From Selaginella moellendorffii (Eukaryota; Plantae; Lycopodiophyta), in NCBI RefSeq assembly GCF_000143415.4, contig NW_003314347.1:124001-188000 (forward strand): a stretch of 64,000 nt of DNA, given 5' to 3'. Shown piece after piece: positions 31,709-34,299 of the stretch; position 1 is the first letter of the stretch, and each line of letters starts with the position of its first letter. A program made the translations under genes and the position numbers. The notes under the pieces were generated by a model. That model worked only from the letters and a program-made list of their open reading frames with translations. It was not told where the DNA came from and did no database searches.

Positions 31709-34299
31709 ATGAGTCGCTACGATGGCCGCTACAGTGATCCATCCTCGTACCGAGACCGGAAAAGGTACTGGAAATAACCCTGGGTGTTCATCATCGGGCT
31801 CATTCCTCTCATTGTCGTTTTCTCGCAGTGATTTTGGAAGCAGCTATGGCGGTGGAAGCCGGAAGAAGGATTTCGATTCCATGGTCCTCCCGAAAGAGCA
31901 GTTCGACAATTTGTCCCCGTTCGAGAAGAACTTTTACATCGAGCATCCATCTGTGGCAGCGCTAACGGATGACGAGGTTGTGGATTTTCGGAGGCGAAAG
32001 GACATCACCGTCCAGGGTAGAAATGTCCCAAAGCCTGTCCGGAGTTTTGCCGAGGCTTCATTTCCAGGTAGGCGAAGGTTTCTTCTATCGAGGACAAGGT
32101 TTTGATTGATCTTATGTGGATGTTTTGGCAGACTATGTTCTCCAGGAAGTTCTCAAAGCCGGTTTCAAGGAGCCCACCGCCATTCAAGCTCAAGGATGGC
32201 CCATGGCTTTGAAAGGGAGGGATCTAGTAGGACTTGCAGAAACGGGATCTGGGAAAACTCTTGCATACCTTCTACCTGCAATCGTCCATGTAAATGCACA
32301 GCCTTATCTTGGTAAGTTCTATAAAGCGTTGGACTCTTTGTTTATTTTCTGGTTTGGAATTCTTAGCACCCGGCGACGGTCCCATTGTGCTGGTGCTAGC
32401 TCCTACACGGGAGTTGGCTGTTCAAATTCAACAAGAGTCTGCTAAGTTTGGTTCCTCGTCAAAGATCAAAAGCACTTGCATTTATGGTGGAGCTCCAAAG
32501 GGACCTCAGATTCGTGACTTGCAAAGAGGTAGGGAAAAGAGATGATTCACAAGGAGAGACTGACTGCGTCTACTTGCAGGGGTCGAAATTGTCATAGCTA
32601 CCCCGGGACGCCTCATCGACATGCTTGAAGGCCGACATACTAACCTTCGGAGGGTGACATATTTGGTGCTGGATGAAGCTGATAGAATGCTGGACATGGG
32701 CTTTGAGCCTCAAATCAGAAAGATAGTTGGACAGGTACGAGAGTATGCTATGCCATTGTGTGGCGAGATTAAGTTTTGTTTCTTTCACTGTTGCAGATTA
32801 GGCCAGACCGCCAGACGCTTTACTGGAGCGCAACATGGCCTAAAGATGTCGAGCAGTTGGCTAATCAATTTTTGCATGATCCCTACAAGGTTTATATTGT
32901 TAAAAATCTCTCGGTTTTCAACGTCTTTTCTCTCTTTCTTGCAGGTGACAATAGGCTCTTCCTCTCTAAAGGCGAACCATTCTATCGCTCAGCATGTTGA
33001 AGTTGTTAATGACTACGAGAAGTATCAAAAGTGAGTATGGGAATTCTCTTTTCTTTCACTTTCTAAAGTAAGAACATACTCTGACGTTTGTCTACAGACT
33101 GATCAAGTTGCTGGACGAGTTCATGGATGGAGGAAAGATTCTCATATTCATGGAAACGAAACGCGGATGTGACCAAGTAACTAAGCAGCTGCGAATGGAA
33201 GGCTGGCCAGCTCTCTCGATTCACGGGGACAAGAGCCAGGCAGAGCGCGACTGGGTTCTGTCCGAGTTTAAGACCGGCAAGAGCCCGATCATGACCGCAA
33301 CTGACGTTGCAGCTCGCGGCCTAGGTAAGTCGGTCCTCATTGTCATTTGCTTGCATGATATGTCTGGGCTCTCTTCTTGTTTTCTACTGTCTTCCGTTTT
33401 TGCATTAGTTCCTTCTCATTCTTTAGTTTTAAGATTCACCTGGTACAGCTCTCTGTTGCACAGTCATAGAAGCTCTTTTTGCTTTTCTTTTCTTTGTGTT
33501 GGGATGCAGCAAAATTCCTGTCACCCATAAGTTGATGAGGAATGGGTGGGCTGTGGACCAGTTTCCTGATGGCGCGATTGTGGCTTGGCGGCCATGCCGG
33601 AGGGATGTGTTCGGGATGGATGAAACGTTCAAGCTTCCGCCGCCATGCTGCTGTCCGCATTTCCAGAGCTGGACACATTCTACAGCCTAGTCGAGTTTCA
33701 TCATGGGTGACGGCTTCGGTAAAGAAGAGAGTTTACTCGTTTTTCCTTTTCCTTCCGTCGCTAAAAAACTCAAGCTTTTTCTTTCGGTGCCCAGAGCGAG
33801 GGGAGGTTTCGTTTAGCCTTGTGCTCCTCGTTTTCTGCTCCATTTTTTCTCATTACCAAGTTACTGACTCGTGGCCTTTTGTTGTCAAACAGATGTCAAG
33901 GACATCAGATATGTGATCAACTACGACTTCCCTGGCTCTTGCGAGGACTACGTGCATCGCATCGGAAGAACAGGCCGAGCTGGTGCAAAGGGAACGGCGT
34001 ACACGTTTTTCACCGTGTCAAACGCCAAGCACGCCAGGGAGCTGGTGTCCATTCTCTCGGAGGCTGGGCAGCGTATAACCCCGGAGCTCCAGTCGATGGT
34101 GAATTGCTCCAGAGGATTTGGAGGAGGAGGTAAGGAAGCTCTAGCTCGCTTGTCTTTGGTTTTCTTAGATCTCTTCGCTCACTTTGCTCGTTTTCTCGCA
34201 GTTGGCTTTCGTGATCGAGGCCGCGGATTTGGAAGGGGCCCCGCGCAATCTGGATCGAATGCTGTTCCTCTAGGCAGCAATCGTCCCTGGGGTCGATAG
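31709..34299 (+). CDS. RH20: DEAD-box RNA helicase of the DBP2/DDX5 (p68) family, RH20-like
   Basis: FEKNFY, Q motif ([10 protein letters not shown]), [30 protein letters not shown]|[14 protein letters not shown], and an RGG tail. Long intron at 33325-33892. Confidence 0.96.
33518..33713 (+). promoter_or_regulatory. Structured intronic RNA element (long hairpin) over a candidate poison cassette exon (33510 to 33706 or 33718)
   Basis: Five nested helices found by hand, a flanking polypyrimidine-CAG acceptor and GT donors, and an in-frame TGA at 33533-33535. Confidence 0.72.

What the first reader, a model, noticed from the sequence alone, without database searches (positions are those of the whole stretch)
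33325..33892. Rod-like ~200-nt RNA hairpin spanning a candidate poison exon in the long intron of DBP2/RH20
Seen: this intron is 568 nt while the gene's other coding-region introns are ~50-75 nt. Its centre forms nested helices: CTGTCACCCAT 33518-28 with ATGGGTGACGG 33703-13; GATGAGG 33534-40 with TTTCATC 33696-702; TGGGCTGTGGA 33547-57 with TCTACAGCCTA 33679-89; CCAGTT 33558-63 with AGCTGG 33667-72; TGGCGGC 33586-92 with GCCGCCA 33639-45. Many are G-U pairs, which points to RNA on the sense strand. The hairpin base sits 8 nt after a polypyrimidine-CAG acceptor (33509). One donor is buried in the stem (GG|GTGAC, 33707) and one lies just outside (CG|GTAAAG, 33719). Inclusion gives an in-frame TGA at 33533. 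Established: yeast DBP2 and animal DDX5 have a large conserved intron near motif V, and DBP2 autoregulates through it; a structured splicing-control motif has been reported in the plant DRH1/RH46 paralogs. Inference: a helicase-activity sensor in which unwinding switches splicing toward NMD, possibly a distinct undescribed motif in the RH20 clade.
Basis: partly seen in the sequence, partly recalled or inferred. Interest (0 to 1): 0.85.

Follow-up and report, generated by a model that had tools for sequence, protein, structure and literature searches.

The report
Conserved splice-site-hiding hairpin in helicase intron
The one long intron of a plant RH20/RH30-type (DDX5/DBP2-like) RNA helicase gene holds a base-paired RNA element, conserved from this short-intron land plant to flowering plants, that buries a really used alternative splice site producing truncated transcripts; it is probably a second, so far undescribed, helicase-sensing feedback element.

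Summary
Intron 8 (33325-33892) is 568 nt; the other eight coding introns are 51-72 nt. Positions 33518-33713 fold into a sense-strand-specific rod (-98.5 kcal/mol, z -4.5; antisense z -1.5).

RNA-derived contigs from four studies show the productive junction plus a poison exon, 33562-33718. Its acceptor is not 33509 but AG 33560-61, inside the stem (unpaired probability 0.02). A TGA follows three codons later. Partial and full intron retention are also seen.

The element is not the published DEAD motif of DRH1/RH46. It differs in intron, sequence and architecture, and it has no Rfam hit. I found homologous arms in the same intron of 13 other sequences, including Amborella, Nymphaea, Dioscorea and Populus RH20/RH30 genes. 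There the two arms lie about 250-650 nt apart.

Of 35 consensus pairs, 16 show compensatory changes (8.0±2.1 in shuffles). 85% of cells are canonical, against 29-46% with slid registers.

Helicase sensing with negative feedback is an inference from the DEAD motif and the yeast DBP2 intron; it was not tested. I rate it a new variant of a known kind.

Another first-stage note (s1-394680) flags a similar helicase intron elsewhere in this genome.

The parts
31709..34299 (+). CDS span of a 510-aa DEAD-box RNA helicase of the DDX5/DBP2 family (RH20/RH30 clade), 10 coding exons
   Evidence: Exon joining gives an open 1533-nt frame with all helicase motifs. It is 72.5% identical over 480 aa to a Hibiscus RH30-like protein and 77% over 367 aa to a Salix RH30-type protein. 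All best named relatives are annotated RH20/RH30.
33098..33324 (+). Exon 8, ending ...TDVAARGL + G (motif V)
   Evidence: RNA contigs end and join here.
33325..33892 (+). Intron 8, 568 nt, phase 1. It sits at the position of the long, conserved, inefficiently spliced DBP2/DDX5 intron
   Evidence: The productive junction 33324>33893 is seen in 4 of 4 runs. An intron at this position and phase occurs in most genomic relatives fetched.
33518..33713 (+). Rod-like hairpin, 68 predicted pairs, 15 of them G-U
   Evidence: A shared consensus structure with L001/L005/L021 was found by RNAalifold.
33543..33564 (+). Conserved 5' arm core (GGGTGGGCTGTGGACCAGTTT). It pairs with 33666-33693 and contains the alternative acceptor
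   Evidence: blastn and nhmmer matches to other taxa. Alignment and covariation.
33560..33561 (+). Alternative 3' splice site AG actually used, buried in the helix CCAGTT/AGCTGG
   Evidence: Junction 33324>33562 in runs X1, X2 and X15. Mean unpaired probability is 0.02. The AG is invariant in all 14 aligned sequences: CCAG in 13 and CAAG in L042, where the pairing partner changed to match.
33562..33718 (+). Poison (cassette) exon, 157 nt, frame-shifting
   Evidence: Contigs spanning 33560-33718, with junctions on both sides, in X1 and X15.
33567..33569 (+). Premature TGA, third codon after the alternative junction (G|TT TCC TGA)
   Evidence: Read from the sequence; computed.
33586..33645 (+). 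Upper conserved helix TGGCGGC/GCCGCCA with a variable apical part
   Evidence: One pair changes C-G to U-A in L021.
33666..33693 (+). Conserved 3' arm core (GAGCTGG...CTACAGCCTAGTC). Its AG at 33684-85 is homologous to the acceptor used in angiosperm gene models
   Evidence: No use of this AG was seen in this organism.
33719..33720 (+). Alternative 5' splice site (CGG|GTAAAG), 5 nt beyond the hairpin base
   Evidence: Junction 33718>33893 in X1 and X15.
33507..33509 (+).
   Evidence: No such junction. Contigs drop rare variants, so low-level use is not excluded.
33893..34129 (+). Exon 9 ([14 protein letters not shown]...)

Best explanation
Intron 8 of this RH20/RH30-type DEAD-box helicase gene carries an ancient cis-regulatory RNA structure. 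Two conserved arms pair with each other: 5' ...GGGCTGNNNNCCAG|... and 3' ...GGAGCTGG...GCAGCCCGGTYGACTC.... In this genome they form a compact 196-nt rod; in flowering plants they form a long-range duplex. The duplex buries the AG of an alternative 3' splice site, and probably its branch region, so the default outcome is removal of the whole intron and a coding mRNA. When the duplex is open, the buried AG is used. This gives either a 157-nt poison exon (33562-33718) or retention of the 3' part of the intron. Both put a stop codon three codons downstream and yield non-coding transcripts, presumably NMD or nuclear-decay substrates. The most likely opener is the encoded helicase or its close paralogues, which would give negative feedback on helicase level. 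Shown here: the structure, its strand specificity, its conservation and covariation, the junctions, and the stop codon. Inferred: who opens the helix, NMD sensitivity, and the sign of the regulation.
For: Structure. RNA junctions 33324>33562 and 33718>33893, plus alt3 and full-retention contigs, occur in runs from separate studies in which all short introns are spliced out. The buried acceptor has unpaired probability 0.02. Homologous arms occur in the same intron in 13 other distinct sequences, including Amborella, Nymphaea, Dioscorea and Populus RH20/RH30 genes. Covariation: 35 consensus pairs are 85% canonical, against 29-46% for slid registers. 16 pairs show compensatory change, against 8.0±2.1 in 500 shuffles, with 0 of 500 reaching the observed value. 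RNAalifold on the compact forms gives the same picture. In L042 the CCAG became CAAG and its partner G became U. All 14 sequences reach a stop 3-45 codons after the acceptor. Public angiosperm models (Pistacia 'isoform X2', Salix dunnii) join exon 8 to the AG of the 3' arm, so splicing into the paired region recurs in flowering plants. Precedents: in the DEAD motif of DRH1/RH46 a stem hides an alternative 3' splice site and helicase activity shifts splicing to non-coding forms. In DBP2 the same-position intron mediates helicase-dependent autoregulation in yeast (citing Barta & Iggo 1995).
Against: No experiment or dataset here links helicase level to use of the buried site. NMD sensitivity is untested. 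Contig depths cannot quantify isoforms. DEAD-box proteins unwind only about 10-15 bp, and this rod has 68 pairs, so only local opening is plausible. Duplex energy alone is unremarkable in Amborella and Nymphaea (z -0.5). Another angiosperm intron type (L010, L018, L027-L036) and L048 lack the element, so it is not obligatory for the clade. The acceptor used here (5' arm) differs from the one in the angiosperm models (3' arm). In the DEAD study RH20 did not act on the DEAD reporter and RH30 did so only weakly; this says nothing about their own intron, but it shows that these helicases are not generic openers.
Confidence: 0.55

Rival explanations
1. The conserved structure regulates the same alternative splicing event but responds to something other than the gene's own helicase. 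Candidates are temperature, transcription elongation rate, another RNA-binding protein, or another helicase such as DRH1.
For: The structure and junctions fit any structure-dependent switch equally well. In the DEAD system, opening the stem was not sufficient without DRH1, and specificity depended on an RGG tail, so additional factors matter.
Against: The host gene is a DDX5/DBP2-family helicase whose same-position intron is autoregulatory in yeast, and the sister clade uses a helicase-sensing stem. It would be a coincidence for a rod-like target to sit in a helicase gene for unrelated reasons.
Confidence: 0.22
2. The pairing mainly helps productive splicing of an unusually long intron by looping out its middle and bringing the true splice sites together. 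The poison-exon and retention isoforms are by-products.
For: The arms bracket most of the interior of the intron, with 250-650 nt looped out in angiosperms. The productive junction is present in all runs.
Against: Looping out does not explain why the AG and flanking bases of the alternative acceptor are invariant and covary with their partners. It does not explain why a stop always follows, or why a second conserved block with a 5'-splice-site-like AAG|GTGGGC follows the 3' arm. Introns of similar length in the element-free type (L010, L018 and others) do without it.
Confidence: 0.1
3. The hairpin is a precursor of a small RNA, an intronic miRNA or siRNA, as reported for the conserved human DDX5 intron.
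For: It is a long imperfect hairpin in an intron. A title cited (Moore et al. 2011) reports a miRNA in the DDX5 intron.
Against: No Rfam family matches, even at E<=10. In flowering plants the arms are hundreds of nt apart. The conserved parts coincide with splice-site dinucleotides rather than a 21-nt duplex. No small-RNA data were available.
Confidence: 0.05
4. The hairpin is a MITE or other inverted-repeat insertion, or a chance fold, with no function.
For: Inverted repeats in long introns are often transposon-derived.
Against: It is single copy in the 64-kb window. It is orthologous in position and sequence across very distant plants. It has G-U-based strand asymmetry and covariation.
Confidence: 0.02

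Closest known systems
DEAD motif of plant DRH1 (RH14)/RH46 (Sack et al. 2025, PMC12218528; Burgardt et al. 2026, bioRxiv 10.64898/2026.01.23.701338)
   Same: Both are structured RNAs in a long intron of a DDX5-like plant helicase gene. In both an alternative 3' splice site AG is base-paired in the stem. Both give the same set of isoforms: coding, cassette exon, alt3 and intron retention, with all non-coding forms carrying premature stops. Both are conserved across land plants.
   Different: The paralogue clade differs (RH20/RH30, not RH14/RH46). The intron differs: motif V ARGL|D here, against the intron before the Q motif (...LRE|..AGF) there. There is no sequence similarity; the DEAD consensus AG|GTGCGATATTYGCTC is absent from the window with up to 3 mismatches. 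The architecture differs: a 68-pair interrupted rod or long-range duplex here, against a single 19-20-bp stem with a 3-5-nt loop there. Those authors state that only DRH1 and RH46 carry their motif in Arabidopsis.
Autoregulatory intron of yeast DBP2 / S. pombe dbp2 intron 2 / human DDX5 conserved intron
   Same: The gene family and intron position are the same, by the literature. The intron is unusually long for its genome and is inefficiently spliced or retained. Helicase-dependent negative autoregulation is reported in S. cerevisiae. Here the intron is 8-10 times longer than its neighbours, and retention contigs are seen.
   Different: In yeast the output is intron retention and nuclear decay (Mmi1/exosome in S. 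pombe), not a poison exon. No conserved helix hiding an AG is described in the text I could read. I could not read Barta & Iggo 1995 or Moore et al. 2011.
Stem-loops with concealed branch sites controlling poison exons (animal SF3B3; PMC11162794)
   Same: An intronic stem hides splicing signals upstream of a poison exon, and destabilising it raises inclusion.
   Different: That is an animal gene that is not a helicase, with concealed branch sites rather than a concealed AG. That paper does not mention helicases or plants.
Plant and fungal TPP riboswitch splicing control
   Same: RNA folding decides whether an alternative splice site is exposed, and the result is unproductive transcripts (described).
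   Different: The ligand there is a metabolite bound by a defined aptamer. Here no aptamer-like fold or Rfam match exists, and the presumed input is helicase activity.

Membership tests
DEAD motif (DRH1/RH46 structured RNA) | The host gene belongs to the RH14(DRH1)/RH46 clade | tested here: not met
   The best named relatives (72-77% identity) are all annotated RH20/RH30. Exon-intron pattern differs from P. patens DRH1 cDNA. No formal tree with RH14/RH46 was built.
DEAD motif (DRH1/RH46 structured RNA) | Located in the long intron just upstream of the Q motif (...FP.E.LRE | ..AGF..PTPIQ) | tested here: not met
   The nearest intron in this gene (32068-32131) is 64 nt, lies 8 codons upstream of that position, and has no hairpin. 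The element is in the motif V intron.
DEAD motif (DRH1/RH46 structured RNA) | Conserved sequence AG|GTGCGATATTYGCTCC ... GGAGC.AATGTCGTACGC | tested here: not met
   0 matches in the window with up to 3 mismatches. The consensus was read from the published variant sequences.
DEAD motif (DRH1/RH46 structured RNA) | Single hairpin with a 19-20-bp stem and a 3-5-nt loop | tested here: not met
   The element here is a 196-nt rod with 68 pairs and several internal loops. In angiosperms the arms are 250-650 nt apart.
DEAD motif (DRH1/RH46 structured RNA) | An alternative 3' splice site AG is paired within the stem, and its use gives PTC-containing isoforms | tested here: met
   AG 33560-61 is paired and used in RNA, with a TGA three codons later. 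This shows a shared working principle, not membership.
DBP2/DDX5-type conserved regulatory intron | The intron interrupts motif V (ARGLD) of a DDX5/DBP2-family helicase and is long relative to the genome's other introns | tested here: met
   The intron is phase 1 at ARGL|D and 568 nt, against 51-72 nt for the others. The same position and phase occur in plant, and in unidentified more distant (about 50-65% identical exon 8), contigs. Equivalence to the yeast and human position rests on PMC4695336 and was not aligned here.
DBP2/DDX5-type conserved regulatory intron | Inefficient splicing or retention of this intron | tested here: met
   A full-retention contig occurs in X6 and an alt3 contig in X2, while all other introns are spliced. 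More than 20 public angiosperm protein models read into this intron, with tails GRITVC*.
DBP2/DDX5-type conserved regulatory intron | Negative autoregulation that depends on the helicase's catalytic activity | not testable with these tools
   This needs reporter or mutant experiments.
Rfam families (miRNA precursors, snoRNAs, riboswitches) | A covariance-model match | tested here: not met
   cmscan of 31000-35500 at E<=10 gave no hit inside 33325-33892.

The most novel reading that the evidence does not exclude
This is a second, independently evolved or very anciently diverged class of helicase-sensing RNA in plants. It resides in the very intron that mediates DBP2 autoregulation in yeast, and it is conserved from this plant (called a lycophyte in another first-stage note) to flowering plants as a duplex that hides alternative acceptor AGs. 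If true, it would give the long-known but mechanistically unexplained DBP2/DDX5 intron autoregulation a concrete structural mechanism, and it would extend the 'helicase senses its own substrate' principle beyond DRH1/RH46.
Probability: 0.4. Interest if true: 0.85.

Novelty: new variant of a known kind. Interest (0 to 1): 0.72.

Why it matters
The only characterised helicase-sensing RNA in plants, the DEAD motif, is reported as restricted to DRH1/RH46. Its authors ask why only these two helicases are so controlled and suggest that such sensors may be more common. This element would be a second example. It sits in the sister RH20/RH30 clade, has a different sequence and fold, and is supported by covariation.

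It also lies in the intron whose autoregulatory role in yeast DBP2 has been known since 1995 without a structural explanation. The compact version in this genome is 196 nt in a 568-nt intron, within a gene whose other introns are about 60 nt. That makes it an unusually tractable minigene for disruptive and compensatory mutagenesis.

There is a practical point as well. Many public angiosperm protein models are mis-extended into this intron.

Tried and rejected
1. Rfam 15 at E<=10 gave nothing in the intron.

2. The MITE/repeat idea failed: there is a single copy in the window.

3. DEAD motif membership is rejected on gene clade, intron position, sequence and architecture.

5. Searching exon-sized ORFs for poison-exon tails found only retention-type tails in fragments. 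Full-length models gave three alternative-junction tails.

6. Fetching the Pistacia and Salvia isoform-X2 loci failed because they are not on record. I mapped their tails onto related loci instead.

7. Non-seed-plant named orthologues could not be obtained. Both full-length searches returned angiosperms only. L001, L005, L021, L012, L016 and similar loci therefore remain taxonomically unnamed metagenome or SRA contigs.

8. Duplex energy against mononucleotide shuffles is only moderately discriminating, with z from -0.5 to -4.7. A dinucleotide-shuffle script timed out.

9. I did not build a covariance model. The compact alignment is about 300 columns and the long-range forms cannot be modelled as one hairpin.

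10. Barta & Iggo 1995 and Moore et al. 2011 are not held.

11. Seven literature searches found no description of an RH20/RH30 intron structure. Subscription journals are not covered, so prior description cannot be excluded.
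Full report
**The gene and the intron.** Joining ten exons between 31709 and 34299 on the + strand gives an uninterrupted 510-codon frame with all DEAD-box motifs. Eight coding introns are 51-72 nt. Intron 8 (33325-33892) is 568 nt. It is phase 1 and splits the Asp codon of ARGL|D in motif V. The protein is 72.5% identical over 480 residues to a Hibiscus RH30-like protein and 77% identical over 367 residues to a Salix one. Every high-scoring named relative is annotated RH20 or RH30. Another first-stage note calls this genome a lycophyte; I did not verify that.

**The hairpin.** All of them appear in the minimum-free-energy fold of the 231-nt excerpt and of the complete intron. The fold has 68 pairs between 33518 and 33713, 15 of them G-U.
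- Sense RNA folds at -98.5 kcal/mol, z -4.54, with no shuffle out of 200 as good.
- The antisense strand gives -69.2 kcal/mol, z -1.49.
- The sequence is single copy in the window.
- Nothing in Rfam 15 matches it, even at E<=10.

**RNA evidence.** The runs that hold this stretch are recorded only as probable RNA. Their contigs lack every short intron with exact GT..AG junctions, so they derive from spliced RNA. Four runs from four studies were laid on 32500-34400. The following junctions and contigs appear within intron 8:
- 33324>33893, the productive junction, in all four runs.
- 33324>33562, in three runs.
- 33718>33893, in two runs.
- Contigs covering exactly 33560-33718 (the cassette exon).
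- A contig covering 33560-33920 (alt3, 3' part of the intron retained).
- A contig covering 33295-33920 (full retention).

This is the same repertoire (coding, CE, alt3, IR) published for DRH1. The acceptor is not the exposed CAG at 33509. It is AG 33560-61, which lies in the helix CCAGTT/AGCTGG and has a mean unpaired probability of 0.02. The 157-nt exon shifts the frame, and a TGA (33567-69) is the third codon after the junction. Contig depths cannot rank isoforms. Still, the non-coding forms were abundant enough to be assembled in three of the four runs.

**Relation to the DEAD motif.** The DEAD motif is a single 19-20-bp stem with a 3-5-nt loop and a highly conserved sequence, AG|GTGCGATATTYGCTCC...GGAGC.AATGTCGTACGC. 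It lies in the intron that precedes the Q motif of DRH1/RH46 (...LRE|..AGF). In the window gene the nearest intron (32068-32131) is 64 nt, at a different codon, and unstructured. The DEAD consensus is absent from the whole window with up to three mismatches. Gene clade, intron position, sequence and architecture all fail, so membership is rejected. The working principle, a stem hiding an alternative acceptor in a helicase gene, is shared.

**Conservation.** I used the exon-8 peptide to fetch fragments and loci and located the orthologous intron by tblastn.
- The intron sits at the same codon and phase in most genomic relatives. It is usually long (0.4-2.3 kb).
- A roughly 430-nt island inside the 2-kb introns of L001 and L005 is 80% identical between them, while the rest of those introns does not align. 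The window's 5' arm matches that island (E 5e-7 and 2e-4).
- A profile of the 5' arm then found L012, L042, L021 and others (E 1e-16 to 7e-10).
- RNAduplex located a complementary 3' arm in each.
- In all, 14 distinct sequences carry the two arms. These are the window; L001, L005 and L021 (compact, like the window); Amborella trichopoda, Nymphaea thermarum, Dioscorea sansibarensis and Populus euphratica RH20/RH30 genes; and six unnamed contigs. In the named angiosperms and most unnamed contigs the arms are about 250-650 nt apart.
- Consensus: 5' ...GAGTYGGCSGGCTGCNNNCCAG|TT... and 3' ...CCCATCCAC..TATGGAGCTGG...GCAGCCCGGTYGACTCA....
- Another intron type (L010, L018, L027-L036, probably the second angiosperm paralogue) and L048 lack the element.

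**Covariation.** RNAalifold on the concatenated arm alignments predicts three helices with 35 pairs.
- 85% of cells are canonical pairs, against 29-46% when the 3' partner is slid by 1-3 columns.
- 16 pairs show a change on both sides, against 8.0±2.1 in 500 column shuffles, with none of the 500 reaching 16.
- The covariation score is 0.281 against 0.199±0.015.

Clear compensatory events:
- The second C of CCAG with its G changes to A-U in L042, whose close relative L047 keeps C-G.
- G-C changes to A-U in L051.
- U-A changes to C-G in L016, with a U-G intermediate in L043.
- C-G alternates with U-A (window, Dioscorea), with a U-G intermediate (Nymphaea).
- C-G changes to U-A in the top helix of L021.

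The tool's own RNAalifold runs on the compact forms give 9 of 71 and 5 of 53 pairs with compensatory change. There are two caveats. The shuffle control ignores phylogeny. Duplex energy alone is not exceptional in two taxa. A proper R-scape test on a larger, named alignment is still needed.

**Recurrence of the splicing event.** In all 14 sequences an in-frame stop follows the 5'-arm acceptor within 3-45 codons. Three public gene models support splicing into the paired region in flowering plants:
- Pistacia vera 'RH30-like isoform X2' continues after ARGL with a peptide that is the translation of the sequence just after the AG of the 3' arm (GCAG|CCYGGTTGACTCA).
- The Salix dunnii model does the same.
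- Salvia hispanica 'isoform X2' joins a little further downstream.

Splicing into the paired region therefore recurs in flowering plants, but at the 3'-arm AG rather than the 5'-arm AG used here. Both AGs lie in conserved helices. More than 20 other models read straight into the intron, with tails GRITVC*, which reflects frequent retention.

**Mechanism.** The following is shown: a conserved duplex occludes alternative acceptor AGs; the occluded AG is nevertheless used in vivo; and its use is non-productive. The following is inferred: the encoded helicase or its paralogues locally open the duplex, so that high helicase activity diverts splicing to non-coding forms and gives negative feedback. 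Four considerations support the inference:
- The DEAD system, where catalytic mutants lose the effect and compensatory mutants restore repression.
- The helicase-dependent autoregulation through the same-position intron of yeast DBP2.
- The sign logic: a structure that promoted the poison exon would give positive feedback.
- The presence of a short RG-rich C-terminus, a feature that matters in DRH1.

I give this 0.55. Other inputs acting on the same switch get 0.22. Looping-out to aid productive splicing gets 0.10. A small-RNA precursor gets 0.05. A transposon or chance fold gets 0.02.

**Novelty.** The element is not in Rfam 15. It is not among the 16 motifs of the plant structured-RNA screen. 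The DEAD preprint states that only two Arabidopsis helicase genes carry its motif. Seven full-text searches found no description of it. Coverage of subscription journals is incomplete, so earlier mention as a conserved non-coding sequence cannot be excluded. I class it as a new variant of a known kind: structure-gated alternative splicing that autoregulates a helicase.

Noticed in passing
L009:18238-19222 (Amborella), L097, L098, L012, L047, L001, L005, L021; about 40-70 nt downstream of the 3' arm: A second highly conserved block, CCTTATCCCTGCAAG|GT(TAAGGT)GGGCA, follows the 3' arm in angiosperm-type and L001-type introns. It looks like the 5' splice site of the poison exon. In Amborella and Nymphaea a complementary CAGGGATAAGGG lies about 90 nt further on, which suggests a second hairpin around that donor. 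The window lacks this block and uses CGG|GTAAAG instead.
   Followed up: partly
L061-L068 (metagenome contigs, exon 8 only 52-66% identical): More distant, unidentified eukaryotic DBP2-like genes have an intron at the same codon and phase. It is also strongly structured, for example L065 at 662 nt and -227 kcal/mol, with GCAGCTCGTTGCCAG|TT paired to a downstream GGTTGCTTCC. An AG-hiding duplex may therefore not be limited to plants.
   Followed up: no
L010, L011, L018, L027-L038 (introns starting GTACAC/GTACAA): A second group of plant-like RH20/RH30 loci has a 0.4-1 kb AT-rich intron at the same position without the two arms. This is probably the other angiosperm paralogue, which has lost the element or never had it.
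   Followed up: partly
Public proteins P0391-P0425 and others: 26 angiosperm RH20/RH30 protein models or transcript ORFs continue after ARGL into the intron (tails GRITVC*, GRIIMC* and similar). They are retained-intron products annotated as proteins.
   Followed up: partly
window 30450-31380, + strand: The upstream neighbour is a small multi-exon gene whose product contains CPCRHY...WNCPCVPMRERKECHCMLFLT. From my own knowledge this is the signature of the ferredoxin-thioredoxin reductase catalytic chain. I did not check it with tools.
   Followed up: no
another piece of the same genome (note s1-394680): A first-stage note describes a 'three-hairpin RNA switch and poison exon in the DEAD-box helicase intron'. 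It could be a paralogue, the other haplotype, or the DRH1 orthologue with the DEAD motif. The sequence look-up returned nothing.
   Followed up: no
L020:2401-2565: A short ENA contig with exon 8 89% identical carries a 5' arm variant, CAGCGGGCTGCTTGCTGGCCAG|TGTTC...GTGGCGTGGCGGCGG, about 75 nt into the intron. The contig ends before the 3' arm.
   Followed up: no
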